NCBI RefSeq assembly: GCF_022045235.1
Contig: NW_027266280.1
Location: forward strand, 6,138,001-6,202,000
Reading direction: 5' to 3'
DNA: 64,000 nt
Source: Haliotis cracherodii
Taxonomy: Eukaryota
The notes beneath the pieces are model-generated. The model had not been told where the DNA came from. It saw only the letters and a program-made list of their open reading frames with translations, and did no database searches. Shown one piece after another: positions 25,161 to 57,925 of this stretch; positions within the stretch are counted from its first letter, which is position 1; every line of letters starts with the position of its first letter. Position numbers and translations under genes: made by a program.

Positions 25161-25581
25161 GATGATAAATTCCGATCACACAAGACACCAAAGCTCCATT
25201 CACCTAGATCTCCAAATGGTAAGATAAACTGACTAAAACCCTGTTCTGCCCTGGCTAAACTTTCCCTTCGCGTCTGAGTAAGTGAATTAGGACAACTTCA
25301 TATTTGAGGTATATCAATTTATTGGTCATATACACTTCTTTATCACAGTAGTATCACATATTGAATAACTGACATTCAACTGTCATGATGAAACACAGAT
25401 AATATACTTCTGTGGACAAACAATATATAATCAAACGATCAATTACTCAATTCACTTGAATCATGAGTACACTATATTATTAACCATAGCCTGTGTTACA
25501 GTTTCACGTTTCACGTTTGTTTACTGCCATATGAGTCGAAGCACAACACATTCTGATTATTGTCACCTTTGGGTCATGTCT

Positions 25582-25920
25582 TCACAGATTAGATCCGAGT
25601 GAGGACTTGGTCACATCACGGGCTCGATACACCATCTTGGAGGACTCGTCAAACACAGACTGATGCCGCTCTCGCACTCGCTGCATCCAAGCTTTCACGG
25701 TGGGGCTGCTCTCATACAGGTTCTCCTCTTGTACGGCGTACAGCTGTATGAGTTCACAAGCTCCGAGTATGTCCGCTATAGAGATGTCATTCCCACACAG
25801 GAATGGCTGTGATTTGAGGAAATGTGTTTCAATACCGGTGACAGCTTTACGAACCAGTTTGCGATATTTCTCCACCTTATCCATGTCAATTGGTTGATTC
25901 TTTGCCCTGGGGATTATTAG
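25582..25920 (-). CDS. GSTT1: Theta-class glutathione S-transferase, copy 1, exon 4 (339 nt, includes stop)
   Basis: Acceptor ttgcAG 25922-25921; FLCGNDISIADILGACEL C-domain motif; AATAAA at 25323-25318. Confidence 0.93.
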   Translation of the reverse strand, partial: LIIPRAKNQPIDMDKVEKYRKLVRKAVTGIETHFLKSQPFLCGNDISIADILGACELIQLYAVQEENLYESSPTVKAWMQRVRERHQSVFDESSKMVYRARDVTKSSLGSNL

Positions 25921-27631
25921 CTGCAAACAAATATATTTAGTGATACCCAAATTAATATTAAAAATATTTTGATTCCAAAAACTACATCGACACCATCATT
26001 AGAAAGTGACCACTGTGGTCTACAATCTTCCTCAGGGGAGACAATCGATACTCAAATTCTACAGAAATTTTCAAGTATATTCCATTTGGTACAGATCCAA
26101 GGATGGCGTGTTTAACGTACTGTACTTGGAAATTGAGCCGGGAAGCGAGCCATATTTTGTGATTTTAATGCAGCATTATGCAAGCTGTGCACAGTTGTAC
26201 ATGGAATAACTCTTGAATTCCTAATTATTATTTAAATAACATAGTGTTTCCATTAAGAATGGGAAAACAGTTAGTAACCAGGGAAAATAGTTGGTAACCA
26301 GAAATGACAATTGCTCCCTTATAGGGGAGACAATCTATCCCAACCAAGGGGAGACAATATGGTCAAACTCAGGGGAGATAATCAATACTCAAACTCAATC
26401 TCTGACAAATGTCACCTCCCTCTTGGATGCAAATAGGTCTCTTCTGGCCACAAGAAATCCAAATGCTACTGCTACTACTTCTTATCCCCTTACAGATGAC
26501 CAATCTGTAACATACTTCATCCCAAACATAAAAACTGAACGGGTGTCACAAGAACTATCAATTCATGTTGCAATTCTGCATCAAAAAGGTTTCAAAAATT
26601 GTGGAGCCAAACAAACAGGCAATGACATAACCTCACTTGACTTTCAGTCAGAGGAGCATAAAAAAGAACCTCCTCAAATATCAATAACCAGTATGTGTTC
26701 CATTGGACACAAATGATTATGTGGATTTTGGAATGATCGAAGCAAATTTCGTTCAAGCAGGGATACCAACCCTAATCAAAGCTTTGGAGAAATTAGGGGA
26801 AAAAAATTAATTTCATGTGAAAAAACATAACATTAACTTTTTTTAGAAGGGTCATCACCTTTGAGAAGCAGTTTCTCGCTACAACATTTTCGTTAGGCCT
26901 AGACGTAAGTTAAACATGTGATAGCTCCTTGCAATCATAAAATTCAACATGTGGCACTAATTAACTGTTTTTCAGAAAGAAATAGTGGAGTTTCAAGTTC
27001 AAAAGTAATGTCAGTGTACATGCAATTAGTTCCCTGTCTGCACAATGACTGATCAATATGACACCAGTGTGTTTTACATGACAACCACTTAGAGACCTTG
27101 TATCAACACAATGTGAATTAAAAGCATGGCTCTCAATGGTCTTGTTGTTGAATACTTCATGTCACCATAAACAATTTCCTCCCTGTGATATTTTATGCAT
27201 GTAAATAGTTCATGAAGAAAAATGACAGAAGTTATTTGCCTACTTCTGGACTTTTTTGCTTTCTTAAACAGGAAGTAAAAACGAAACGTGTGTCGGACTT
27301 TGTCATAATAAGGGGGATGCCGGAGAACCAAGATTATTATTGTTTTTAGCCTTAGGGAAGGACAAGCATAACTGGACAATTTTAGGCTCAAAATTGTAAC
27401 TATTTGAATAGACAAAATAGTAATGGTTGACATTTCCAATTGAAGCATATATTAACAAACTAGATTCAAGACTAACTCTATACTGACAACATCTGAGATA
27501 AACAAAAATAAAAAAGTACATCAATATTTGAGATAAATGATTTCTGAGATAAACAATTTATGGGACAAATAACATTTATGAGAAGTGAGTTTGAGAGAAG
27601 GGGAGGTAACTGTGGTGATGTTGATACTCAC

Positions 27632-27785
27632 AAGTTCTCGGAAGAGCATGGCGGCACTGCCTCTTGTGTTCATGTGCTGCCAGTTGCAGTATTCATCAAT
27701 CTTTGCCTGGGCTCGGAGGTCAGTGCGTGGGTACCAGTGATCAGGTACATTGTATTTACAGGAAAGGTACTTCAGAATGGCCACA
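27632..27785 (-). CDS. GSTT1: Theta GST copy 1, exon 3 (154 nt)
   Basis: SVAILKYL..PDHWYP..AKIDEYCNWQH; AG/GT boundaries in phase. Confidence 0.93.
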
Positions 27786-27942
27786 CTGAAAAGAAGGATT
27801 AGGTAGACAGAAAAGACCACAGCCCTACAGTGTCTGAGAACAATATTGCCAGGCTGCCATCAGGACATACAGACTTTAGAACCAGCAGGCCCTGAATAAA
27901 CTCTTCAGGCCCTCAGTTAAAAACTGCAGCTCATTGTACAAA

Positions 27943-28293
27943 TACCGTAATCGACGTAATAAGCCCCCAGGGCGCTTTCAAAATTAGAAATAGGGGGCTC
28001 TTATTAGAATATTAATTTGGCAAAAGAAACACAGAGTTGAAAGGTAAATTTCGTGGTTTATGCTGACAGCCTGAAATGTTTACATACGACAGATATATTT
28101 TTCCAGAATTTAATTGCCCATAATTAAGGGTGCATATAACACATGAGTGCGTATTAAACGCGAACAAATAATTCTTGTGTACACTAATCAATCAGACGGG
28201 ATGCTAATTGGGATTGTTCACTAGCCAATATATCAGCAAATATCGCCGTGGGCGCTTATTAGAGACGGGGCGCTTATTACGTTGAATACGGTA
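27943..28293. mobile_element. Tc1/mariner-superfamily MITE (TA-CCGTA...TACGG-TA)
   Basis: Terminal inverted repeats. The paralogous site in GST copy 2 (ttgtacaaaTAaatcaac, ~53555) is empty with a single TA, confirming a TA TSD. Confidence 0.9.
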
Positions 28294-28519
28294 AATCAAC
28301 ACACAAATTAACTGCAGGCCATAAGGACCCATACAAGTTTGAAACTACGGGCCCAATATAAGATCTACCTGAAACATTCGGGGGACACTCTTCAGCATTA
28401 TAAACTGTTTTAACTTTAGGTTCAAAAGGCAAAGGTCATAAAGATCAACTAAATTCTTGTATGTCATTTTCCCAAATACATTTTGAGTGAGTAAAGAATG
28501 TTATTCAATGCTGCTATGT

Positions 28520-28860
28520 GACTGCAAATAATTCTGGATGAGTGAGTGAGTGAGTGAGTGAGTGAGTGAGTGAGTGAGTGAGTGAGTGAGTTAATTGGAT
28601 TTAATGCCGCTATTAACATTATTCCAGTTATATCACGTGTGTCAGCTTAATGTGGGGGGAAAGCCCGAAGTGATGCAGGTCTTAGACGTTTACCACTTCG
28701 GTGAAACCCACGAGCACAGGTATGGTGCTGACAAACTTAGAAATATAATCGGGGTGAACTGGGATTCGAACCCACGATCAAAGGTTTCTGGCGTGCCCAA
28801 AGGACGCAGCTCTGCACAGCAAATCGTGGAGCCTTAGACAACTGGGCCACCTGTGCCCCC
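28520..28860 (-). mobile_element. SINE family A with long (GAGT)n tail
   Basis: Reverse complement of family A; absent from intron 2 of GST copy 2. Confidence 0.9.
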
Positions 28861-29324
28861 TTGAATGAGATAAACCTATGGTTGAAATAATGAGCGACAT
28901 TCAACACTGTGAGGGTAAGGACATGAAATCAACCAGACCACTGAATCTGACCACACAATCCATATTAGTTGCCTGTTTTGACAAAGATAGCATAGTTGGA
29001 ACCCTTCATTGGGTTGAACCAAATGTATTGTCATATATTTAAAAAACAATCATCTGCATGCAACAAATACTTTGTGAAAACATGTAGAATCTTAAAGCAA
29101 TCCTTATCATATTCTTGAGTATTAGAGCTTCTCATGTTAGCTTTTGTAGAGCTCCAGCATTTTGGTTGTACTTAGAGTAAGTTAATTGAAATTGTATTAG
29201 TCACAATTAAACTTTTCATTAGTTTCAACTAGATGGTAAGTAACATCAATTAAGTCAGTCTGGATTATGGCCTGTGATGAGCTAAAAGATTATTGAAAAT
29301 ATAGGACCCAGTAGAGTACCATAC

Positions 29325-29412
29325 CTCTCTGTCAAAACAAATCCATTATCATCAATAACTGGCACCAGCTTGAAGGGGTTGATTCTTGCATATTCCTCTG
29401 AGAAGTGTTCTC
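29325..29412 (-). CDS. GSTT1: Theta GST copy 1, exon 2 (88 nt)
   Basis: GEHFSEEYARINPFKLVPVIDDNGFVLTE; AG/GT boundaries. Confidence 0.93.
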
Positions 29413-29539
29413 CTGTAATAAAGTTGCACAAAAACCAGCATGTATTACAGAGAGTCAGAAATATTATCATAACAGTCAAAATTATCCCAATAATATCATG
29501 TCCACCACAGAACTCTGTAAATAAGTAGTACAGGCCGGA

Positions 29540-29697
29540 GTGATTGAGTGAGTGAGTGAGTATGGTTTTACGCCGCTTTAAGCAATATTCCAGCAATATC
29601 ACGGCAGGGGACACCAGAAATAGGCTTTACACATTGTACCCATGTTGGGAATCTGGGTCTTCGGCGTGACGAACGCCTTAACCACTAGGCTACCTGA
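29540..29697 (-). mobile_element. SINE family B
   Basis: gagtatggttttacgccgc..accactaggctacc. Confidence 0.85.
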
Positions 29698-29736
29698 CAA
29701 TCCCTGTACAGGCCAGACAAACGAGTGGTTGACAGA

Positions 29737-30119
29737 CAGGGCTGGGACGGGTAACTGGTATGGGTCCTGAGTAGGATCCGGGTACCCACAGGACTACCTG
29801 GACCAGTGGTTAGTCACGTGATATGTTCCTTTAATAAAATAACAATAGAAGTTGCTTATGTTTGCATTTTTTCTGACTATTCATGCATTTTTTCTGAATT
29901 TTATACGCTAAAGATAAAACTTCAGTCAACTTCAGTGTATGCATGATCTGAACGTTATATATATGTGTATCTAAATAGTATTTGCCAAGGCTTGGGTAAA
30001 ACAATTTCCAATTGGACATTATGTACCCAACTCTTGAGACCTACAGGGGTTACCTAGGTAGGGTCAGGTTATCAGGGGTCAAGTACCTGGGTAGTAAATA
30101 TGGACTCGTCCCAGCCCTA
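29737..30119. mobile_element. hAT-like MITE
   Basis: TIR AGGGCTGGGACG...CGTCCCAGCCCT; shared with GST copy 2 (53886-54271); third copy at 62369-63050. Confidence 0.8.
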
Positions 30120-44556: not shown

Positions 44557-45109
44557 TTAAAATACAGGGCTTTTCACTGGATCTATTTATAGATATTTGT
44601 ACATGGACACTGACATATAGCGATATTGCAGGAGGTACCCATAAATTCTCTCCGCAAAGTATTGTGTAGATTCTAAATATGTTTTGTTTGTATTTATGCA
44701 TAAAAAACTGGTAAATAATAACCACAAAATACCACTCCCAATGATATAACTACAGAACATATTAACTTACCAAAAAAGTTACCATACTACATTCATTGAA
44801 GTCATAATCCTCCCGAAGGGTGGTTCCTTTTCCACTCACACTCAGTCTGCATGCTCTGGCCACGTATGCTTATCACCTGATCACCTGAATGATGTTGAGG
44901 GGAGAAATTACCAGGGCCCACTTGCACAAAGGGATCTTAGCGCTAAGATGATCGTAACTCTCATACTTTAACATAGGCTTACAATAGTCGTAGCCCTTAG
45001 ATAGCTTTTGTTGATAAAACAAGGAAGTAGTCCGCGTTTCGGTCACATGATATACATGTGAATGACCTCCATCAACTAATGCGCCTGTGGCATTGGTGTT
45101 ATGCTAAGT

Positions 45110-46190
45110 CCTTTTGTGACACAGTGATGTCAGTCTTGGTTCAGACACTGTCCTTTTGTGGCACAGATGGGTGTCAGTCTTGGTTCAGACATTGTTCTTG
45201 TGTGACATATTGATGTCAGTCTAGGTTCAGACACTGTCCCTGTGTGACACAGTGATGTCAATCTAGGTTCAGACACTGTCCTTGTGTGACACAGTGGTGT
45301 CAGTCTAGGTTCAGACACTGCCCTTGTGTGACACAGTGATGTCAGTCTAGGTTCAGACACTGACCTTGTGTGACACAGTGATGTCAATCTAGGTTCAGAC
45401 ACTGTCCTTTTGTGACACAGTGATGTCAGTCTAGGTTCAGACACTGTCCTCGTGTGACACAGTGATGTCAGTCTAGGTTCAGACACTGTCCTTTTTGTGA
45501 CATTGATGTAAGTCTTGGTTCAGACACTGATATTGTGTGACACAGTGATGTCAGTCTATGTTCAGGCACTGTCTTTGAGTGACACAGTGATGTCAGTCTA
45601 GGTTCAGACACTGTCCCTGTGTGACAGTGATGTCAGTCGTGGTTCAGACACTGTCCTTGTGTGACACAGTGATGTCAGTCTAGGTTCAGACACTGTCCTT
45701 GTGTGGCACGGTGATGTCAGTCAATGTTCAGACACTGTCCCTGTGTGACACAGATGGGTGTAAGTCTAGGTTCAGACACTGTCCTTGAGTGACACAGTGA
45801 TGCCAGTCTTGGTTCACACACTGTCCTTGTGTGACACAGTGGTGCCAGTCTTGGTTCACACAATGTCCATTTGTGACACAGTGGTGTCAGTCTAGGATCA
45901 GACACTGTCATTGTGTGACACAGTGATGTCAGTCTTGGTTCAGACACTGTCCCTGTGTGACACAGTGATGTCAGTCTAGGTTAAGACACTGTCATTGTGT
46001 GACAGTGATGTCAGTCTAGGTTCAGACACTGTCCCTGTGTGACACAATGGTGTCAGTCTTGGTTCAGACACTGTTGCTGTGCAACACAGGCAGGTGACAG
46101 TCTAGGTTCAGACACTGTTGCTGTGTAACACAGATAGGTGACAGTCTAGGTTCAGTGTGCTACATCGCAATGATGTCAGTCTAGGTCTAG
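45110..46190. repeat. 42-bp minisatellite downstream of GST copy 2
   Basis: Same unit as 24482-25160, in a longer array. Confidence 0.95.
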
Positions 46191-46618
46191 ATGATAAATT
46201 CCGATCACACCAGAAACTAAAGTTCCATTCACCAAGATCTGCAAATGGTAAGATAAACTGACTAAAACCCTGTTCTTCTCTGGCTAAACTTTCCCTTCGC
46301 GTCTGAGTAAGTGAATTAAGACAACATCATATTTGAGGTATATCAATTTATTGGTCATATACACTTCTTTATCACAGTAGTGTCACATATTGAATAACTG
46401 ACATTCAACTGTCATGATGAAACACAGATAATATACGTCTGTGGACAAGCAATATATAATCAAAAGATCAATTACTCAATTCACTTGAATCATGAGTGCA
46501 CTATATTATTAACTGCAGCCCCTGGCAACACAGGCTGTGTTACAGTTTCACGTTTGTTTACTGCCATATGAGTCGAAGCACAACACATTTTGATTATTGT
46601 CATCTCTGGGTCATGTCT

Positions 46619-46957
46619 TCACAGATTAGATCCGAGTGAGGACTTGGTCACATCATGGGCTCGATACACCATCTTGGAGGACTCGTCAAACACTGACTGA
46701 TGCCTCTCTCGCACTCGCTGCATCCAAGCTTTCATGGTGGGGCTGCTCTCATACAGGTTCTCCTCTTGAACGGCGTACAGCTGTATGAGGTCACAAGCTC
46801 CGAATATGTCCGCTATAGAGATGTCATTCCCACAGAGGAATGGCTGTGATTTGAGGAAATGTGTTTCAATATCGGTGACAGACTGACGAACCAGTTTGCG
46901 ATATTTCTCCACCTTACCCATGTCAATTGGTTGATTCTTTGCCCTGTGGATTATTAG
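46619..46957 (-). CDS. GSTT1: Theta GST copy 2, exon 4 (339 nt)
   Basis: Paralog of 25582-25920 with an intact frame. Confidence 0.9.
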   Translation of the reverse strand, partial: LIIHRAKNQPIDMGKVEKYRKLVRQSVTDIETHFLKSQPFLCGNDISIADIFGACDLIQLYAVQEENLYESSPTMKAWMQRVRERHQSVFDESSKMVYRAHDVTKSSLGSNL

Positions 46958-47254
46958 CTGCAAACAAATATATTTAGTGATACCCAAATTAATATTCAAA
47001 ATATATTGATATTGATATTGATTCCAAAAACTACATCGACACCATCATTAGAAATATGGATCACTGTGGTCTATAATTATCTTCCTCAGGGGAGATAATC
47101 GATACTCAAACTCTACAGATATTTTCAAGTAAATTTTCATTTGGTACAGATCCGAGGATGGTGTGTTTAACTTGCTGTACTTAGAAATTGAGCCGGGAAG
47201 CTAGCCATATTTTGTGATTATATTGCAGCATTATGCAAGGCTGTGCACAGATGT

Positions 47255-47704
47255 GGCCTCAGACCACAGTTATCCCCCCTAAGTTTTACCATGAACCTGA
47301 AGAAAAATAGGAGAATATAGTACCCTGTTTAAATGGGCTGTTCAGCCTGTGGCAATTGTTTTGGAGTGACTTGTGATAGCTTAAATGAAAGATAAGACAT
47401 TGTAGTTTGCTGTCAATTTTTTGTTAGCCCCAATCTGTGAAGGTATTGATTCCAGCTTCCCATGATTTGACCCCAAGTTGAAAGCCGTTGTGTGTGTTTC
47501 GGCTCGAAACTTCCGGTGAGCATTGTTGACAGTGGTTACTGCGAAAGCGAGATGGTGAATGCTGGCCGAAACTTTGCGTGTTAAGTGACAAGTGGCAGGT
47601 TGGTCAGCATGCAACAGGAGAACAGCCTACGACTGATAATAATTATGGTGGGCTGTCATGTCACTGTAGATAGCAAAGAAGGAAATTAATTGTGGTCTGA
47701 GGCC
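47255..47704. repeat. Left long terminal direct repeat (450 bp) bounded by 18-bp inverted repeats
   Basis: GGCCTCAGACCACAGTTA ... TAATTGTGGTCTGAGGCC. Confidence 0.9.
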
Positions 47705-48006
47705 TGATATGGTGAGGCTAGTGCATATGTTTGATTCACTATATCTCTATCATTATGCAAGAAATTGACTTGAAACTTGGCACATATATTCACAGTAAGT
47801 GTTGAAATCTGTGTACATGTGTTTTCAGGTTGAAATATTTTTATATTTTTTTTAATGATTTTGTGTACTTTTTCGAACATGCGATTTTATGCATGTTGTT
47901 GAAATGAGTGAATGCCAGCATCATAATAAGTCATATGAGTTCCAATATGGTAGAATCATATATCACTACACCTGTCGTGCCTCGTTTGCACTTGTACAAT
48001 ATTAAT

Positions 48007-48405
48007 ATGGCCAACATCAACGCCTTTTTTAAGAAATACAGAGAGATATTTGCTCGGCATTCAGCCAAAAGTGACCAACATGGCACGTGTCAAAACGGCC
48101 CATGTCACATCTGGTCTAGGGCATGTAAGCCCAGTGGATATGGGGTTTTGAGGTACTATTGCCCCATATCCAACAAGTGGTGCACCATACATGCCCATAG
48201 ACTTAGCTACATTGTGCATAGGGAAGATTTCGACATAGGTGATTTGGACATCAGCCATTTGTGCCATAATTCCAAATGCACCTATGTCGAACATCTGTCT
48301 GCTGAGCCGCATAGTGTAAATGCAGACAGAGTAGCCTGTGTGAACAGGGGTGCATGCAAAGGCCATGCGCCATATGCAGATTGCCTTTTGGCTTTGAAGC
48401 TGTGA
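48007..48405 (+). CDS. His-Me finger (His-Cys box, I-PpoI-like) endonuclease
   Basis: CHIW..GYG..HAHRLSY..DISHLCHNSKC..HLSAEPHSVNADRVAC..CKGH..C; frame intact. Confidence 0.88.
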   Translation: MANINAFFKKYREIFARHSAKSDQHGTCQNGPCHIWSRACKPSGYGVLRYYCPISNKWCTIHAHRLSYIVHREDFDIGDLDISHLCHNSKCTYVEHLSAEPHSVNADRVACVNRGACKGHAPYADCLLALKL

Positions 48406-48598
48406 AAGGAGACAACAACAAGCAAAGTAAATGATTAAGACTTTATTCATTAACTGATGTTCATCACAGTGACAGCTGATTGTAGCATTGCATATACCAA
48501 AAAACATAGCTGTACAGCAACTGTTACCTATTTTAACTCATTTTTTTACACAAAGTCAGTCATAAGCTAGTCATTAGCTACAGTATTACTGCACATGT

Positions 48599-50585
48599 TC
48601 ATTTCTTTGAAAATGAATGGTCAGCTTGTTCACTAAAACATGGCACAGGGTCAAGTTGACCCTTTTTGTAGCCCCCCCTCTGTTTGTCACTCAGTTTTGA
48701 CTTTAAATGTTCACTAATTTTGATCCCATGCTGCACAAGCTTTCTTTTCACAACACTGGGACTTTTCTGGTATTTCTTCTGATAGGCAGCTTCCTTGTCC
48801 ATTTGTTCAAGTGACCGCACTGCTCGACTTGATAGTTCAACACCAGAGTTTTGGCACTTGTCGATTGCTGATGTCCCGGGGACATTGTTGAGCCTATGAA
48901 TAGTCGATGAAGCCCTCCCAATCATATTTCTTGAAAAGTTCACGTTCTTTGGCAAAGAAATACTCATTGATCGGTTCACGGCTTCACATTTCTGTGTGTC
49001 TGTGTACAGTTTCATTTGTTCGACAACTTCGACACTCAGCTTCATCTTGAGAATTTCATTCATCAAGTGTTTATCATTGTCATCCATATTGAAATGAGTG
49101 ATTTTGTTGCAGCCGAGGAACATGGACCGCTGCCACCAGCTGTTTGTTACACCGCCTCGACACACAACAGAGTACCAGGCACATCTGGAGCAGTCGCCGC
49201 TGTAGCACTTAAGGGTTGCTTCGAGCACTCTAGGTAAGATACTACGAAGTGCTTTCATGTCGCCTGCATGATCCTTCATGAGTTCTTTCAGTATCAGGCT
49301 GCACAGTGCCTTTACATCCTGACTTAGCACCTTCTTAGCCTCCAATTTCTGTGTACGAGTAGTGCCGGGGAACATATCTGGGTTGAAATCAGCTCTGTAG
49401 CATTGCCAAAACTGTCCTTGAGCCAAGTGGGTGGGATCAGCTAGCCTCTGCACCTTCCACATAGGGTCTAAGACTTTCAGAGCTTGGTCTATTCCATCTG
49501 CAGACTTAGAATCCCCATCGGTAGTAGCATACTTAATGAGCACACCCTGTAGCGCAAGCTGATTTCCAATGTCCTCTCCCATATTGAACTCGGAGAACGG
49601 AGCGAAGGCCGACATGTTTGCAGTACAGTCTGGGTGCCCCCCTGGACACTTCACATCCATTCCTTTTCCTTTCAGCCAAGCACCAGTCCAGCACAGCTTA
49701 TTCTGGAATGACGCGCCGATGATGAACTTCTTATCGGTAATAGTTTCGCAGGCTATGCCGATTGCTTGTGATGCATTCTGCCCTGGCTTCTTCCTGCTGG
49801 CTATTGTCGTTGAGTTGTATCGGCCATCCTTGGCAATATACATCTCGCATGGCTCAGTACCCCTCTTCCTTTACCAATTCAACTTTTTCAGCCATATCCT
49901 GTGTATTCAGTTCAGTAACAGCAATAGCCGCCTTGGTAGAGGTCCTCTGCATACTGCTCCTGCATGGGGGCGGAATGTCCATGTTCGCCATCAGTAACCT
50001 GGCTCTTGTGTTTCCAATAGGGGTGTCTTGAAGACCCAAGGCAAGTCCTACGTTAGGGGCTGCTGGGTTTGGTCCAGGTTTGCCTGTCTTGATTTCTTTA
50101 TACAACTTCATTTCAGGTGCTGTGAAGTCACATACAACACATTTCAGTGTCACTTTCCAGCATGCTCCCCATTTTCTCTCCTTGGCTATCTGCAGCTGAG
50201 GGTCGTCGCAGTCAGTGGATGTCGAACGATGCAGTCGCAGAGCTGTGTTCCATGCTTCGGCCACCATTTCATTGTCGACTAGTCGCATACCCTCCAAGTC
50301 ATCTTTACTTGACTCTTGTTTCAGGTCTTGCATGCTGGCTGCAGTAGGCCGCAACAGCCTCACAGAGGTAGAGATGCCCTCACAGTCAGGTGTCGACAGC
50401 CCAGTGCCATCCAACCTAGACTTGGTAACCAGTGAGAAGTCTTCAGCACTCATCCTAGTGACAGTCCTGGGTATCTGGGGTGGAGAGTCACTTTCTGTCT
50501 CTTCAGACTCAAGGGTGAGACCTTTGTTCCAGGGAGTGTGGCCCTTGCTGAACTGTGACTTGATTCTCTTGCGATCGCCTTTCAT
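48599..50585 (-). pseudogene. Kolobok/Mutator-like DDD/E transposase with one frameshift near 49865
   Basis: Starts MKGDRKR (50585); CxxC N-terminal domain; putative catalytic DGRYNS, TTDGD and TQKCE; DPTH motif. Confidence 0.85.
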
Positions 50586-50619
50586 CGTGATTGTCTCGGA
50601 CAGAACTAATGAGCTCTGA

Positions 50620-50681
50620 CTGACTGACTGATATAGAAGATTTAACGTGCGCTTTCCGACTGCAGCGTATTTCGCACACGG
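50620..50681 (-). mobile_element. 62-bp LINE 3'-end insertion with 9-bp TSD
   Basis: Matches ~1711-1778; TSD gagctctga (50611-50619, 50682-50690). Confidence 0.9.
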
Positions 50682-51373
50682 GAGCTCTGAGCACAAGATG
50701 TAGCTACCCCATCACTGTGTAATGTCAATGGCAATGACAAGCGTGTAAATGTATTAGAAACTCTCGAGACATACATATGTCTTGTGCCAGCAGTCCAAAT
50801 TGCAGTTGAGCTGTACACACAGTTTGACACCTTGGCGTGTATTGGCCGAGTGTCAGCTGAGAGTGGTCACACCTGGTGACTCGCTGCACTTGATTGGCTG
50901 TACACAGCTACCTTTCCCACCAATCATTTTAATGAGTAGAGACAGAGCTTTCATGTGAATAAAAATTTAACAGTTTCAGTTTTCATTTTTGTTGAAAAAT
51001 ATGAACTTTAATTCAATTTTTTTGTTAAAAAATGCATGCATGTATCTAAAAATAGGCCCCCAAAAAAAGAATTGATTTACCGGACTGAAATTGATGTCTG
51101 TTGATAGTATATGTAATGACGAGACAGGAACACTTGCTTGTTTTGTCCATTTCCTTTTGGTTATGGAGTTATGGACAAATTAGAACTGTATTTGAAATGA
51201 ATTCATGCCAAAAATGTACTCTCAAGTGCTATGGATGCAGCATGATTTCAAATGACTATAAGTCAAGCTGTGTATGAGTTAGGGATTCCAAATTTTCTGT
51301 GAGCCTTCAACAGTGTATGGGCTTAGTATTGATGAAGTTTTATTTGAATTGCATACTTTTTTCTGTCCTGATA

Positions 51374-51563
51374 GGCCTCAGACCACAGTTATCCCCCCTA
51401 AGTTTTACCATGAAAATAGGAGAATATAGTACCCTGTTTAAATGGGCTGTTCAGCCTGTGGCAATTGTTTTGGAGTGACTTGTGATAGCTTAAATGAAAG
51501 ATAAGACATTGTAGTTTGCTGTCAATTTTTTGTTAGCCCCAATCTGTGAAGGTATTGATTCCA
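51374..51563. repeat. Truncated right terminal direct repeat
   Basis: Near-identical to 47255-~47454 apart from a short deletion. Confidence 0.9.
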
Positions 51564-52495
51564 ACTCAATCTCTGACAAATGTCACCTCCCTCTTGGATG
51601 CAAATAGGTCTCTTCTGGGCACCAGAAATCCAAATGCTACTGCTACTACTTTTTATCCCTTTACAGATGACCAATCTGTAACACAGACTTCATCCCAAAC
51701 ATAAAAACTGAACGGGTGTCACAAGAACTATCAATTCATGTTGTAATTCTGAATCAAAAAGTTTTCAAAAAGTAATATTTACAGTTTTGCATGGACGGTT
51801 GCTGTATGGAGACATAAGCTCACTTGACTTTCAGTCGCAGGAGCATAAAATAAAGAACCTCTTCAAATAGCAAACAGCAAATAGCAAGTGTGAGTTTCAC
51901 TGGACAACAAATGATTATGTGGATTTTGGAATGATCGAAGCAAATTTAATTCAAGCAGAGATGCCAACCCTAATTGAACTTCGGAGTAATCACGGAAAAA
52001 AAAGTCATTTCATGTGAAAAAACGTAACATTAACTTTTTTAGAAGGGTCATTCATCACCTTTGAGAAGCAGTTTCTCACTATGACATTTTCGTTAGGACT
52101 AGACGTAAGTTAAACATGTGATAGCTCCATGCATTCATAAAATTCAACATGTGGCACTAATTAACTGTTTTTCAGAAAGAAATAGTGGAGTTTCAAGTTC
52201 TGTCAGTAATGTCAGTGTACATGCAATTAGTTCCCTGTCTGCACAATGATTGATCAATATGACACCAGTGTGTTTTCATATGACAACCACTTAGAGACCT
52301 TGTATCACTGAGTATCAAGTTGTAATTTAGGCTGAATAAAATAAAAGAATTGGTTCTCAGGCAATGTTTTTTGCAAATACAGTGTGGGCAGTCTTTTTGG
52401 GAGTGGGTCGTTCAAACTAGTATGTAACCAAATAAACAGTTGTGTAACCAAATAAAAGGTTGTGTACAATCAACCTGTAAAAGGGCCTCCCTACA

Positions 52496-52803
52496 TACCG
52501 TATTCGACATAATAAGCGCCCAGGGCACTCTCAAAATTAGAAATAGGGGGCTCTTATTAGAATATTATTTTGAAAGATCCGTAAATTTCGTGGTTTATGT
52601 GGACAGCCTGATATGTTTATATGCGACAGATATATTTTTTCCAGAATTTAATGTCCCATTATTAAGGATGCATATAACACACGTATTACATTACGTATTC
52701 AATCGAAAAGGGTGTTAATTGGGATCGTTCACTAGCAAATTGTTTAGCAAATATCGCCGTGGGCGCTTATTAGAGCGGGGCGCTTATTACGTCAAAAACG
52801 GTA
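52496..52803. mobile_element. Tc1/mariner-superfamily MITE (same family as 27943)
   Basis: TA-CCGTATTCGAC...GTCAAAAACGG-TA. Confidence 0.85.
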
Positions 52804-53241
52804 AATGTATTCCTTGATGAGTAAAATACTGGAACACAACTCCTGTTGGACATGGAATATTTAAGGATTTTTTTATATATTTTGAAATGGAAATAAAAAC
52901 GAAACATGTGGCGGACTTTGTGATGAAGCGGGCGGTGCCTGATAAGCGAGATTATTATTTTTTTTAGCCTTAGGGAAGGACAAGCATAAATGCATAATTT
53001 GTGGCTCAAAGTTGTAACCATTACACAATATAGTAATGGTTAACATTTGCAATTGAAGCATATATAAACAAATTATATTCAAGACTAAATCTATCATGTA
53101 TGTCTATACTGACAACATCTGAGATTAACAAAAATATTTGAGCTAAATGATTTCTGAGATAAACAATTTATAGGACAAATATTTTTTATGTGAACTGAGT
53201 TTGAGAGAAGGGGAGGTAACTGTGGTGATGTTGATACTCAC

Positions 53242-53395
53242 AAGTTCTCTGAAGAGCATGGCAGCACTGCCTCTTGTGTTCTGGTGCTGCCAGTTGCAGT
53301 ATTCATCAATCTTTGCCTGGGCTCGGAGGTCAGTGCGTGGGTACCAGTGATCAGGAACGTTGTATTTACAGGAAAGGTACTTCAGAATGGCCACA
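53242..53395 (-). CDS. GSTT1: Theta GST copy 2, exon 3
   Basis: 154 nt with AG/GT boundaries. Confidence 0.9.
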
Positions 53396-53702
53396 CTGAA
53401 AAGAAGGATTAGGTAGACAGAAAAGACCACAGCCCTACAGTGTCTGAAAACAATATTGCCAGGCTGCCATCGGGACATACAGACTTTAGAACCTGCAGGC
53501 CCTGACTAAACTCTTCAGGCCCTCACTTAAAAACTGCAGCTTATCATGCTTATTGTACAAATAAATCAACACACAAATGTACTGCAGGCCATAAGGCCCC
53601 ATTCAAGTTTGAAACTACGGGCCCAATACCAGTCAACCAGTCTGGATTATGGCCTATGACTAAAACATGAATGAAAATATAAGACCCAGTAGAGTACCAT
53701 AC

Positions 53703-53790
53703 CTCTCTGTCAAAACAAATCCATTATCATCAATTACTGGCACCAGCTTGAAGGGGTTGATTCTTGCATATTCCTCAGAGAATTGTTCTC
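53703..53790 (-). CDS. GSTT1: Theta GST copy 2, exon 2
   Basis: 88 nt, GEQFSEEYARINPFKLVP. Confidence 0.9.
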
Positions 53791-53885
53791 CTGTAATAAA
53801 GTAGCACAAATTATGCATTACAGTGAGTCAGAATTATTATCATAATAGTCAAACATGTCCCAACATAATCATGTCCATTACAGCA

Positions 53886-54271
53886 CAGGGCTGAGGCAGG
53901 TAACTGGTATTGGATGGGTCCTGAGTAAGATTCGGGTACCCACAGGACTACCTGGACCCGTGGTTAGTCAAATGATATGCTAACAATAACAATAGAAGTT
54001 GCTTATGTTTGCATTTCTTTCTGACTATTCATGCATTTTTTTCTGAATTTTATACGTTCGAGTACAGATAAAACTTCAGTCGACTTCAGTGTATGCATGA
54101 TCTGGTCATTATATATGTGTATCTAAATAGTATTTGCCAAGGCTTTGGTGAAACAATTTCCAATTGGACATTATGTACCCAACTCTTGAGACCTACAGTG
54201 GGTTTCTAGGTAGGGTCAGGTTATCGGGGGTCAAGTACCTGGGTAGTAAATATGGACTCGTCCCAGCCCTA
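53886..54271. mobile_element. hAT-like MITE (paralog of 29737-30119)
   Basis: Same position in both GST copies; ends CGTCCCAGCCCTA. Confidence 0.78.
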
Positions 54272-55169: not shown

Positions 55170-56307
55170 CTCGCTCCCGTGTATGGATGTTTTTCTGCAG
55201 ATCCTTTTTAAGTTTCCACCAAACATTCTCAATGATATTGAGGTCTGGGGGACTGGGCAGGCCAATTTAAGCTGTTAATATTGTTGTCACGGCGAAATTC
55301 TTGGACCACACGAGCCCGGTGCACAGGAGCGTTGTCATCTTGGAAGATATATGTGTTGTCAGGGAAATGACGGGCGATGACAGGCTAAAGATTGTCATTT
55401 AGGATATCAATGTACTTTTGTGCATTAATGTTTCCTTCCACAACACTCACGGTACCAATTCCATGATACGTAATGCACCCCCAAATCATAAGGCCAAACT
55501 TCCTCCTCGATGGTGGACATATACAATCGCCAAGCCATTCCTCCCCAACCTTTCTCCAAACTCGTACACGACTGTCAAGTCCCACAATTACTTTACATTC
55601 GTCACTAAATACCACACGTTTCCAGTAGTCATTCAGGATTCACTTCTCGAATTCTGATACTAGATAGACGTCCTCTACGGAATGTTTATTGAATCTCAGT
55701 TAATAATTTTCTTTCAATTGTCCGCTTACTGAAAGGTCTATCCCTGGTCTCATTGAAAATATTTGTTGGTTGGTTTGTTGTTTAACGCCGCACTCAGCAA
55801 TATTCCAGCTATATGACGGCGATCTGTAAATAATCGAGTCTGGACCAGACAATCCAGTGATTGATATCATGAGCATCGATCCACGCAACTGGGATCAATG
55901 ACATGCATCAACCAAGTCAGCGAGTCTGACCACCCGATCCCGTTAGTCGCCTTTTACGACAAGCATAGTCACCTTTTACGGCAAGCATGGGTTGCAGAAG
56001 ACCTATTCTACCCCGCAATCTTCACGGGTCGAAAATATTTGTAATTTCATCTGAAGTTTTTCTGCGATTCTTTTTCACGCAACGTGAAAGTCGTCGGCCA
56101 TCCCGCACATCAAATTTCACAGGTGTTCCTCGTCTGGCTCGATTTTCCACATTTCCCCTATTTACATACCTCTCAATAGATGAGTATACTGTGCTGGAGG
56201 GTATTCCCGTTATTGTGACAATTTCAGACCTTTTAATACCTGCGTCATATAAAGACGTGATCCTTTCTTTTTCAGCGGATGACAATTCTTTCGCTCGCCG
56301 ACCCATG
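55170..56307 (-). pseudogene. Tc1 (DD34E-type) transposase fossil
   Basis: MGRRAKELS..HTH, VFSDE, FQDDNAPVH and WPAQSP-DLNIIENVW; stop at 55385, a frameshift, and a family C insertion. Confidence 0.9.
55767..56030 (-). mobile_element. Family C element, full length, inserted in the Tc1 ORF
   Basis: 12-bp TSD gaaaatatttgt; 5' end GACCCGTGAAG. Confidence 0.92.
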
Positions 56308-57925
56308 TTTTTTACATTCCCGGGCGATACAAAGCAGACGACAAATGACGTCATAACTTCATTCACGTGACTGTCACGTGACGTGCTATACCCTAGCTTA
56401 AAATCCGGACCCATCTCGAGCTGAAATTTGCAACGCGCGCGATTTCCTGATTCACTGTCCAATACGTGAAAACTACTGTGTTCGTTTTCCGAATACTTTG
56501 GACGGAATGACATCTCGTCTCAATTTCCTCGGTTCGGCCACGATGTTTAATCTATTATATGGTCTCTGGTTTTATGCCAAAATATAAGCATAAAAAACCT
56601 GGCTCGTAACCTGGCACGATACATCCATGAAGTTCCATTTTTTAATATAGATGGCAATTTCCTGCTTAAAACGTTCAGAATAACACGATTTAACAAAAGT
56701 CTTTCGTCAAATTCCGAAATTCATCATACCATAGATGTAATTTGATTGGCTGACTTAGGTCACGTACTCAGATTTGATCAGTCACGAACCTTGTAGCAGA
56801 TTTTGGCAAAGAAAGCGTCATTAGAAACCAATATTATCGAAGCTTTCTAGCGATGTGTCACATGGCAGTCTTCGACGAACATGTTATTCGAAAACGGAGG
56901 TATCTCTTCATGTTACTGGACAGTCGCTGTTATCGGAAAATGGGTGATGGCAGATACAGGATTTATTTACGATTCTTTTTAAAATATTTTTCCAATTGCG
57001 TTTTTTATGAAATCTTATAGATTCTGTTTGCGAAAATCGTCAATTTTGCGCTTCCTTGGTCCTTAAGCTGGACGTTATGAATGTGTTAGATAACAGTTTC
57101 TTTATTTACAGCGAACATAATTAAGTTGTAAATGCATTATCTAAATAATGTGATAAACATAACATATATTTATATACAATAGGATTGGAACTTGAAATGG
57201 TGTATAATATGTGGTAGCAAAGATGTTTTACAAACATGAGGATATTTTCTTTGATAAATGTTTTACGAGTGTAATATATATATAATTACTTTGTTATCTG
57301 AATGTCATAACATGCATAATCAGCCATTATTTATATGCAGCATAAATCATGATCATGCAATCTTGTCATATAATTTGAAGTTTTGAGTTGAGAAAAATAA
57401 TTGCTTGTTGATTTTTTATTTTGCTTGTAACTTTTTAAACCACTTGCAAAAATTTGATTGTGCCTAAAAAAAATTAAATTCTAACCCTTTTAATGATCAT
57501 CGCATATACAATAGCATATGTCTCGGTTAGACTAGGCCTAGTTAATTCGGTAAAATTAACGTCTGTCATCACTGTCAAGTGCCGCAAGTCCCAGTCTCCT
57601 AGTTCCTATACTAAACTTAAGAGTTTTACAGGCTTTTACCCTGACCTATAAATTACTGTACTGTTAAATGGAATAATTACTTAATTACAGGAACTTTATA
57701 TATCTTGTGAAGAATTTTGGTACAATAAATATTATTGTGCGTCCCTCGGGACGAAATTTATAGTTTCGTGCGTCCATTCTATAGATGTCTGCGTCACGTA
57801 AAACCCCTGTCTTAGCGGCTGCTGCAACATTATGCTGGGTACAAATTCCATCACTTGTGAACATACTTCAATACAACTTTTGTCAAATAGTGTGACATGC
57901 AAAACAGATTCCGTTCGTGGCATAC

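What the first reader, a model, noticed from the sequence alone, without database searches (positions are those of the whole stretch)
47255..51563. Composite DNA transposon pairing a DDD/E transposase with an intact His-Me finger homing endonuclease between long direct repeats
Seen: a 450-bp block (47255-47704) bounded by its own 18-bp inverted repeats recurs in direct orientation at 51374, where it is truncated. Between the blocks are a His-Cys-box endonuclease ORF (+, 48007-48405, intact) and a convergent transposase (-, frameshifted near 49865). A short tgata flanks the internal region on both inner sides, and the paralogous GST intron lacks the whole unit. Established: this is the architecture of KolobokP, a described Kolobok lineage resembling bacterial composite transposons. 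Inference: each terminal repeat could move alone as a MITE or leave a solo copy. The endonuclease, whose role I do not know to be settled, might cut solo-repeat or empty alleles to drive homing-like spread. It is intact here while the transposase is broken.
Basis: partly seen in the sequence, partly recalled or inferred. Interest (0 to 1): 0.85.

Follow-up and report, generated by a model that had tools for sequence, protein, structure and literature searches.

The report
Degraded copy of known KolobokP transposon

Summary
A 450-bp repeat with 18-bp inverted ends (47255-47704) recurs in direct orientation at 51374 and is truncated near 51563-51566. The 3669-bp internal region starts and ends with TGATA. 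It encodes an intact His-Cys-box endonuclease (48007-48405, +) and a convergent transposase (-) split by an 11-bp deletion at 49864/49865.

This is the architecture of KolobokP (Kojima and Bao 2022, PMC9587614). The closest published families are KolobokP-1_HaRuf and KolobokP-1_HaRub from abalones. Strings of 26 and 36 nt from the published repeat match the window exactly, and 10-residue transposase strings occur in the paper's alignment.

The same genome holds monomers with target-site duplications, solo repeats with 4-bp duplications, arrays such as (repeat-internal)4-repeat made of identical units, and one internal-internal junction. All of these forms are already described.

The window copy is dead as an autonomous element. 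Its transposase is frameshifted, it carries a 62-bp secondary insertion, and a deletion removed its right outer end together with about 190 bp of GST intron.

The endonuclease shows purifying selection between subfamilies (pN/pS about 0.15-0.3). Its target and role remain untested. Novelty: already known. Interest is low.

The parts
47251..47254 (.). Probable left target-site duplication (ATGT). The right copy was lost with the later deletion.
   Evidence: Solo repeats and monomers of the family carry 4-5-bp duplications. The paralogue reads ...CACAGTTGT|ACATGG at the matching point.
47255..47704 (+). Complete long terminal direct repeat (LTDR), 450 bp. It lies in reverse orientation relative to the published consensus.
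   Evidence: 98-99% identical copies genome-wide. Exact 26-nt and 36-nt matches to published KolobokP-1_HaRuf LTDR text on the minus strand.
47255..47272 (+). Outer 18-bp terminal inverted repeat of the LTDR (GGCCTCAGACCACAGTTA).
   Evidence: (I4). The same end occurs in several published KolobokP LTDRs.
47687..47704 (+). Inner 18-bp terminal inverted repeat of the LTDR (17/18 complementary to the outer one).
47705..51373 (.). Internal region (INT), 3669 bp, bounded by TGATA at 47705-47709 and 51369-51373.
   Evidence: At the one INT-INT junction in the genome only a single TGATA is present.
48007..48405 (+). His-Cys-box (His-Me finger) endonuclease ORF, 132 aa, intact. An alternative in-frame ATG lies at 47935 (156 aa).
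   Evidence: Pfam PF05551 at 2.5e-8. The alignment to I-PpoI keeps the S-H-L-C-H-N...C...H...E...N...C motif. pN/pS is about 0.15-0.3 against the other subfamily.
49854..50585 (-). N-terminal piece of the transposase (from MKGDR...), in a different frame from the C-terminal piece.
   Evidence: Pfam PF20700 profile positions 1-135. ORF table.
48599..49843 (-). C-terminal piece of the transposase. It carries the D, CCHC finger, D, DxxH, Cys finger and E motifs.
   Evidence: Pfam PF20700 profile positions 153-353. Motifs read in the uninterrupted 685-aa paralogous ORF.
49864..49865 (.). Site of the 11-bp deletion that frameshifts the transposase. Other copies have CTTCCGATTAA here, between CTTCC microhomologies.
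   Evidence: The undeleted form was also seen in a contig of run X15 (table 4).
50620..50681 (-). Secondary 62-bp insertion of a very high-copy repeat piece, flanked by 9-bp direct repeats (50611-50619 and 50682-50690). It is absent from all other copies.
   Evidence: Depth is 23,445 here against about 400 for the rest of INT in run X1, and loose ends lie at both edges.
51374..51566 (+). Truncated right LTDR (repeat positions 1 to about 200-203, with an internal 10-bp deletion). The outer inverted repeat and the right target duplication are missing.
   Evidence: Comparison with the paralogue shows about 190 bp of intron missing as well.

Best explanation
The stretch is one degraded insertion of a KolobokP composite-like DNA transposon, of the KolobokP-1 family described from abalones. 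It sits in an intron of a theta-like GST gene on the minus strand.

How the family works. Shown: the unit is LTDR-INT-LTDR. Shown: it inserts with 4-5-bp target duplications. Shown: the LTDR also exists alone. Shown: arrays of identical LTDR-INT units exist. Inferred from family knowledge: the DDD/E transposase binds the 18-bp inverted ends and moves either the whole composite, using the outermost ends, or a single LTDR as a MITE-like element. Inferred and untested: the His-Cys-box endonuclease cuts a site in the family's own DNA (the LTDR or abutted ends), so that recombinational repair between LTDRs generates arrays, solo LTDRs and re-formed full copies.

This particular copy. It cannot move as a whole. 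Its transposase is frameshifted by an 11-bp deletion, it took a 62-bp secondary insertion, and a deletion removed the outer half of the right LTDR with its end. Its left LTDR is complete and could still be mobilised in trans. Its endonuclease ORF keeps the catalytic and zinc-binding residues.
For: Anatomy of the unit.

Other copies in the same genome:
- Twelve units including the window's are at least 95% identical over the transposase region.
- There are two monomers, with AGAT and AGCCT duplications.
- There is a (LTDR-INT)4-LTDR array and a (LTDR-INT)2-LTDR array, each with units 100% identical within the array.
- There is one LTDR'-(INT)2-LTDR with a single TGATA at the INT-INT junction.
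- At least 13 solo LTDRs were read, nine of them with clear 4-bp duplications.
- The LTDR search gave 269 candidates against 26-51 for INT.

Match to the literature. The architecture, repeat length, ends, duplications, solos and both multimer types are as described in PMC9587614. Table S1 lists KolobokP-1_HaRuf and KolobokP-1_HaRub at 4539 bp, LTDR 452 bp, 18-bp ends. Exact 26-nt and 36-nt LTDR matches were found. The transposase strings YATTDGDSKS and GACWKVTLKC occur in the published alignment, where the printed surrounding residues look nearly the same by eye as the copy translated.

Endonuclease. Pfam hit and I-PpoI motif. Against the other subfamily there are 10-11 synonymous and 6-11 non-synonymous changes (binomial p = 8e-5 for the C34 copy and 2e-3 for the C5 copy, 132-codon ORF).

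Damage..

Host context. A GST_C exon lies at 46619-46999 (-) and a GST_N exon at 53663-53827 (-).
Against: I could not align the element against the Repbase consensus.

Pfam labels the transposase 'Mutator-like' (PF20700), not Kolobok. The Kolobok assignment therefore rests on the published alignment and on motif inspection.

Two array ends (C67a and C34) show no recognisable target duplication.

No evidence here bears on what the endonuclease cuts. No RNA contig covered its ORF in the two probable RNA runs.
Confidence: 0.95

Rival explanations
1. The 450-bp block is an unrelated MITE that inserted twice, by chance, on either side of an ordinary transposon. On this reading the 'composite' is not a unit.
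For: The LTDR has its own inverted ends, occurs alone far more often than with INT, and solo copies carry their own 4-bp duplications.
Against: At least five other loci join the same LTDR to the same INT at the same TGATA junctions. Target duplications flank the whole LTDR-INT-LTDR unit (AGAT, AGCCT) rather than each LTDR. The architecture is conserved across phyla in PMC9587614.
Confidence: 0.01
2. Role of the endonuclease, published model. It cuts inside an LTDR (or at abutted ends), and repair from the sister chromatid in the wrong register adds or removes LTDR-INT units. This 'induced unequal crossover' offsets the loss of full copies.
For: Arrays of 2 and 4 units are 100% identical within each array, and solo LTDRs are frequent. 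The endonuclease is under purifying selection. The model is stated in PMC9587614 and was still called unconfirmed in 2026.
Against: Identical array units could arise by spontaneous unequal crossover without any nuclease, or could be partly an assembly effect. No cleavage site is known. No transcript of the ORF was seen.
Confidence: 0.35
3. Role of the endonuclease. It cuts solo-LTDR or empty alleles, and repair copies INT (or the whole element) from the occupied homologue. This would be true homing with super-Mendelian spread.
For: The protein belongs to the I-PpoI group of homing endonucleases. The INT-INT junction with a single TGATA looks like an empty site for an LTDR.
Against: Insertion sites share no sequence, so an 'empty allele' offers no common target. 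Only solo LTDRs could serve. The two LTDRs of the monomers show no chimeric old/new pattern of the kind expected if INT had been copied into old, diverged solo LTDRs. Solo LTDRs vastly outnumber full copies, which argues against efficient conversion.
Confidence: 0.12
4. Role of the endonuclease in transposition itself. It would linearise or process a circular LTDR-INT or LTDR intermediate at the abutted inverted ends, which form a palindrome around the 4-5-bp spacer.
For: Abutted ends would give a perfect semi-palindromic site of the kind His-Cys-box enzymes bind as dimers. The paper raises this possibility.
Against: Other Kolobok lineages transpose without such a nuclease. No circle junction (right end, spacer, left end) was reported among the listed joints in the laid runs, though contigs cannot show absence.
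Confidence: 0.2

Closest known systems
KolobokP-1_HaRuf / KolobokP-1_HaRub (Haliotis rufescens, H. rubra; Kojima and Bao 2022, PMC9587614, Table S1 and Data S1)
   Same: LTDR of 450-452 bp and 18-bp GGCCTCAGACCACA... ends. INT bounded by TATCA/TGATA. Total length about 4.5 kb (4512 bp for the uninterrupted copies here, 4539 bp published). A transposase whose printed alignment rows look nearly the same by eye. A convergent His-Me endonuclease. Duplications of 3-6 bp.
   Different: LTDR identity to the HaRuf consensus is only about 88% by eye, with a divergent block in the middle, so this is probably the orthologous or sister family of another abalone species or subfamily. The window copy is additionally damaged: an 11-bp deletion, a 62-bp insertion and a truncated right LTDR.
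I-PpoI and other His-Cys-box homing endonucleases of group I introns (PDB 1A73, 1CZ0)
   Same: Pfam zf-His_Me_endon. Residues conserved at the I-PpoI positions that the KolobokP paper names: Ser-His (S97, H98), H110, E114 and N119, plus aligned Cys/His positions.
   Different: Sequence similarity outside the motif is weak (E about 0.07 against PDB). The gene sits in a DNA transposon, not in a self-splicing intron. Its target site is unknown.
Bacterial composite and pseudo-compound transposons (Tn10-like; IS26 translocatable units)
   Same: Two copies of a smaller mobile unit with its own inverted ends bracket a central segment. The flanking unit can move alone.
   Different: Here the flanking units are non-coding, always direct, and fixed at about 450 bp. 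The transposase is in the centre. The arrangement is a stable lineage rather than an opportunistic assembly.
Canonical Kolobok transposons
   Same: DDD/E transposase with the DxxH motif and a Cys finger before the last E. Ends are 5'-RR...YY-3'.
   Different: Canonical Kolobok elements have simple inverted ends and no LTDRs or His-Me nuclease. From my own knowledge, they also usually make TTAA duplications.

Membership tests
KolobokP | Two long terminal direct repeats of about 450 bp (or about 660 bp) bracketing an internal region | tested here: met
   Left LTDR is 450 bp. The right LTDR is in direct orientation but truncated here. Other copies have 450 + 3612 + 450 bp.
KolobokP | Each LTDR has its own short (11-18 bp) inverted ends, 5'-RR...YY-3' | tested here: met
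   18-bp ends, 17/18 complementary, GG...CC.
KolobokP | Internal region encodes a Kolobok DDD/E transposase with a CCHC finger after the first D, a C/DxxH motif, and a Cys finger before the last E | tested here: met
   Pfam PF20700 on both pieces. In the uninterrupted paralogous ORF the motifs are AMDGRY, LCW...KCPGGHPDC, TTDGD, DPTH, CYSGDCSRC...VC and KCEAVN. 10-mers are found in the published KolobokP alignment. No phylogeny was run here.
KolobokP | Small His-Me finger (His-Cys box) nuclease encoded downstream of the transposase on the opposite strand | tested here: met
   48007-48405 (+) converges on the transposase (-). Pfam PF05551 scores above its cut-off.
KolobokP | Target-site duplications of 3-5 bp without a strict target sequence | tested here: met
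   ATGT, TGAT, AACT, ATCT, AAAT, GTAT, ATAC, AGAT and AGCCT at other copies. The window copy has lost its right flank, so its own duplication cannot be shown.
KolobokP | Solo LTDRs and multimers, (LTDR-INT)n-LTDR and LTDR-(INT)n-LTDR with a micro-deletion at INT-INT | tested here: met
   Solos. Arrays with n = 4 and n = 2, and (INT)2 with a single TGATA.
KolobokP | Sequence similarity to a published KolobokP family | tested here: met
   Exact 26-nt and 36-nt LTDR strings and transposase 10-mers match the supplement of PMC9587614. Full-length identity was not computed, because no reference was available to the tools.
His-Cys-box homing endonucleases (I-PpoI group) | Beta-beta-alpha-metal motif with catalytic His and Asn, and two Zn sites made of Cys/His | tested here: met
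   The alignment to I-PpoI has SHLCHNSKC...EHL..E....N..R..C.....C..H.....C. Pfam scores 34.6 bits against a cut-off of 27.
His-Cys-box homing endonucleases (I-PpoI group) | Sequence-specific double-strand cleavage of a defined, usually semi-palindromic, homing site, followed by copying of the gene into it | not testable with these tools
   No target is known. The literature still calls the role unconfirmed.

The most novel reading that the evidence does not exclude
The LTDR may act as a promoter for plus-strand, endonuclease-sense transcripts that are alternatively spliced. Unspliced RNA would encode the endonuclease. Spliced RNA would run from LTDR donors at 47515/47598 to an acceptor at 49113, then from 49233 to 50325. 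It would skip the endonuclease and run antisense through the transposase. That would give the element, or the host, a switch between nuclease expression and antisense silencing of the transposase. A related possibility is that the endonuclease cuts near LTDR position 190-200, where two independent truncations end.
Probability: 0.1. Interest if true: 0.45.

Novelty: already known. Interest (0 to 1): 0.15.

Why it matters
This finding matters little as a discovery, because the lineage, its architecture, its solo and multimer forms and the open question about the nuclease were all published in 2022, including for abalones.

Its use is practical. This genome has uninterrupted copies, perfect arrays, an INT-INT junction, solo repeats and a damaged copy with an empty paralogous site. 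That makes it a convenient natural set of substrates for the experiment the field still lacks, namely finding what the His-Cys-box nuclease cuts.

Tried and rejected
I tiled the 60 loci already held by their genome coordinates instead.

2. The joint 47108->51563 in runs X1 and X15 looked like an empty or excised allele. It is not one: the paralogue at 26368-26400 carries the same sequence.

3. I tested whether full copies arose by integration into old solo LTDRs, which would leave chimeric LTDRs. There is no such pattern. The low identity of the C4 right LTDR is just a 13-bp deletion.

4. Copy number from read depth. INT is about 30-40 times the flank depth in X1 and roughly so in X22, against 12 assembled units, and an INT-INT joint contig has depth 308. 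Contig mean depths are not copy numbers, and X22 reads were mostly partial. I take this only as a hint that arrays are collapsed in the assembly. The assembly itself has one INT-INT junction.

5. Expression. The two probable RNA runs (other organisms) cover the transposase region but not 48067-48428. Contigs cannot show absence, strand or level.

6. I did not align the published consensus to the window, because that would have meant typing long sequence. Only two short pattern checks and peptide look-ups were made.

7. The higher divergence of the endonuclease region (4.2% against 2.1%, p = 0.004) might mark a recombination patch. I did not pursue it.

8. Earlier scan notes gave nothing that bears on this stretch.
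Full report
**Observation**

- A 450-bp block at 47255-47704 is bounded by its own inverted ends, GGCCTCAGACCACAGTTA and TAATTGTGGTCTGAGGCC, which match at 17 of 18 positions.
- The block recurs in direct orientation from 51374. Of this second copy, 41/41 bases and then 154 bases at 99% are shared. A 10-bp deletion separates the two stretches, and the copy stops at about repeat position 200-203 (51563-51566).
- The 3669 bp in between begin and end with TGATA.

The coding content also matches.
- An open 132-codon frame at 48007-48405 (+) hits Pfam zf-His_Me_endon above its curated cut-off (34.6 bits against 27).
- Two minus-strand frames, 49854-50696 and 48599-49843, hit the N-terminal (profile 1-135) and C-terminal (profile 153-353) parts of Pfam PF20700. 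This is one transposase split by a frameshift.

**What the other copies show**

The 450-bp repeat gave 269 candidate places in the 1.18-Gb genome, and the 40 scored were 90-100% identical. The endonuclease end of the internal region gave 26 candidates, and the transposase part gave 51. Twelve units including the window's are at least 95% identical over the transposase region.

I tiled the fetched loci by coordinate and mapped them on the window unit. This gave:
- two monomers, on C5 and C4;
- a (repeat-internal)4-repeat array on C67 with period 4062 bp;
- a (repeat-internal)2-repeat array on C34;
- a truncated-repeat-(internal)2-repeat on C67, whose internal-internal junction keeps a single TGATA. 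This is the only such junction in the assembly.

Units within each array are 100% identical. At least thirteen of the thirty best repeat hits are solo repeats. Nine of these have clean 4-bp target duplications: ATGT, TGAT, AACT, ATCT (twice), AAAT, GTAT, ATAC and CATT-like. The monomers have AGAT and AGCCT around the whole unit. Two array ends show no recognisable duplication.

The recurrent identical junctions, and the duplications that flank the whole unit, rule out the 'two independent MITE insertions' alternative.

**Damage in the window copy**

The following differences are relative to the other units.
- 11 bp (CTTCCGATTAA, between CTTCC microhomologies) are missing at 49864/49865. This is the frameshift.
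- 71 bp are extra at 50611-50681. They resolve into a 62-bp insert (50620-50681) flanked by 9-bp direct repeats (50611-50619 and 50682-50690).
- That insert is a very high-copy sequence. Its depth is 23,445 against about 400 for the rest of the element in a DNA run, with loose ends at both edges.
- Substitution divergence from the other units is 2.4%.

The right repeat lacks its outer half. The paralogous GST segment in the same window (25171-26198 and 26396-27105; 92% and 88% identity) lacks the element and carries about 190 bp that are missing here. So a later deletion took the outer half of the right repeat, the right target duplication and some intron.

A GST_C exon at 46619-46999 (-) and a GST_N exon at 53663-53827 (-) place the element in an intron.

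Eight other units (C5, C4, C34 x2, C67a x4) have an uninterrupted 685-codon transposase frame and a 156-codon endonuclease frame. The two C67b units have both genes broken. The C5 copy has Arg at the catalytic His.

An intact endonuclease beside a broken transposase is therefore not a pattern of the family. It is what chance gives when one ORF is five times shorter than the other.

**Proteins**

The endonuclease aligns to I-PpoI over the catalytic core: SHLCHN-x2-C, the following His, Glu, Asn and Cys, then C-x-x-H and a last Cys.

Between the window subfamily and the others, the 132-codon ORF has 10-11 synonymous and 6-9 non-synonymous differences, and the 156-codon ORF has up to 11 non-synonymous. 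This gives pN/pS of about 0.14-0.28. The binomial p, against the 1:4 ratio of synonymous to non-synonymous sites, is 8e-5 for the C34 copy and 2e-3 for the C5 copy, computed on the 132-codon ORF. Differences among the young copies are not biased, as expected for decay after insertion.

The transposase gives pN/pS of about 0.43 for window against C5.

In the uninterrupted frame, the following motifs appear in the order the paper gives for KolobokP:
- first D (AMDGRY);
- a CCHC finger (LCW...KCPGGHPDC);
- second D (TTDGD);
- DPTH;
- a Cys finger (CYSGDCSRC...VC);
- the last E (KCEAVN).

**Comparison with what is known**

KolobokP was described by Kojima and Bao (Mob DNA 2022, PMC9587614). The paper reports the following:
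- LTDR-INT-LTDR units with LTDRs of about 450 or about 660 bp;
- inverted ends of 11-18 bp, RR...YY;
- a DDD/E transposase and a convergent His-Me nuclease of the I-PpoI group;
- target duplications of 3-5 bp;
- solo LTDRs, (LTDR-INT)n-LTDR and LTDR-(INT)n-LTDR with a 3-4-bp micro-deletion at INT-INT;
- excision of single LTDRs;
- a proposed nuclease-induced unequal crossover.

Its Table S1 lists KolobokP-1_HaRub and KolobokP-1_HaRuf from abalones: 4539 bp, LTDR 452 bp, 18-bp ends, duplications of 3-6 bp. The printed LTDR of KolobokP-1_HaRuf reads as the reverse complement of the window repeat. I estimate about 88% identity by eye. A 26-nt and a 36-nt string from it match the window exactly on the minus strand, with no matches in 100 shuffles. 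The published INT starts with TATCA, the complement of TGATA.

Two 10-residue transposase strings occur in the published alignment, where the printed surrounding residues look nearly the same by eye as the copy translated.

The window element is thus a member, or the sister in another abalone, of a published family. I did not compute a full-length alignment, because that would have required typing long sequence.

A 2026 review still calls the nuclease model unconfirmed.

**Reads**

I laid one raw DNA run, one DNA contig set and two probable RNA contig sets on 46800-52200.
- The flank-repeat junction at 47254/47255 is bridged in the DNA contigs, so the insertion is real.
- A joint 47108->51563 is the paralogue, not an empty allele.
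- An internal-internal joint (51366->47703) is present.
- The depth of the internal region is some 30-40 times the flank depth. This hints that arrays are longer than assembled, but contig depths are not copy numbers.
- The probable RNA sets come from other organisms. They cover the transposase region but not 48067-48428.
- One RNA set has three joints with good GT..AG sites on the plus strand: CCG|GTGAGC at 47515, CAG|GTTGGT at 47598, TTGTTGCAG| ending at 49112, TAG|GTAAGA at 49233, and TGTTTCAG| ending at 50324. This suggests a spliced plus-strand RNA that starts in the repeat, skips the endonuclease and runs antisense to the transposase.
- The library type is a guess, and the contig sides are only 23-26 nt.

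**Mechanism and odds**

It is close to certain (0.95) that this is a degraded KolobokP copy.

For the nuclease I put the published induced-recombination model first (about 0.35). Next is a role in processing a circular or abutted-end intermediate (about 0.2). The rest goes to other or no function.

Three results weigh against efficient homing:
- insertion sites share no sequence;
- solo repeats far outnumber full copies;
- the monomers' repeats show no chimeric pattern.

**Verdict**

The finding is already known, and interest is low (0.15).

Noticed in passing
window 50611-50690: A 62-bp piece of a very high-copy repeat (50620-50681) lies in the 5' part of the transposase gene of this copy only. 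It ends in a (TCAG)3-like tail on the minus strand and is flanked by 9-bp direct repeats (GAGCTCTGA). It looks like a 5'-truncated retroposon tail inserted after the KolobokP copy landed.
   Followed up: partly
window 47515/47598 -> 49113 and 49233 -> 50325 (+ strand): Contigs of one probable RNA run from a related organism join these points at canonical GT..AG sites, with two alternative donors inside the LTDR. This suggests a spliced plus-strand transcript that bypasses the endonuclease ORF and is antisense to the transposase (sites read).
   Followed up: partly
window 51563-51566, and L041 position 1239 (G000:C67, about 50528597): Two independent LTDR truncations end within about 11-14 bp of each other, at repeat positions about 200-203 and 189. 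They lie in the block GGTATTGATTCC, which is loosely palindromic (8/12), inside the LTDR stretch that looks best conserved against the published HaRuf LTDR. The chance of such proximity is roughly 5%. A possible fragile or cleavage site, but this is pure speculation.
   Followed up: no
L044/L049 (G000:C20:5523386-5525190) and L046/L048 (G000:C14:2091333-2092866): A short non-autonomous derivative occurs at two or more loci, about 87-90% identical to the window element. Its structure is LTDR, then INT 1 to about 1489 with a 115-bp segment (INT 556-670, inside the endonuclease ORF) repeated three to four times in tandem, then only the last 59 bp of an LTDR.
   Followed up: no
window 47905-48900 against the other copies: The endonuclease region is about twice as diverged from the other subfamily as the rest of INT (4.2% against 2.1%, Poisson p = 0.004), with a cluster of six changes at 48153-48213. 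Proportion of synonymous differences (pS) is 0.10-0.14, against 0.05 in the transposase. This may be a recombination patch or relaxed mutation bias.
   Followed up: partly
window 25171-29853 versus 46200-54000: Tandemly duplicated theta-like GST genes share 88-92% identity across introns. The KolobokP insertion is in only one of them, so it is younger than the gene duplication.
   Followed up: partly
window 45024-46191: A minisatellite of about 27 copies of a 42-bp unit (CAGTGATGTCAGTCTAGGTTCAGACACTGTCC...) lies just downstream of the GST gene's last exon.
   Followed up: no
window 55232-56519 (-): Remnant of a Tc1/mariner-type transposase in another GST intron. It gives weak DDE_3 and HTH_SB/HTH_23 hits, and the frames are interrupted.
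   Followed up: no
G000 arrays C67:13219207-13235904 and C34:9489564-9498137: Array units are 100% identical within each array, and read and contig depth over INT is some 30-40 times the flank depth, against 12 assembled units. The arrays may be longer in reality than in the assembly.
   Followed up: partly
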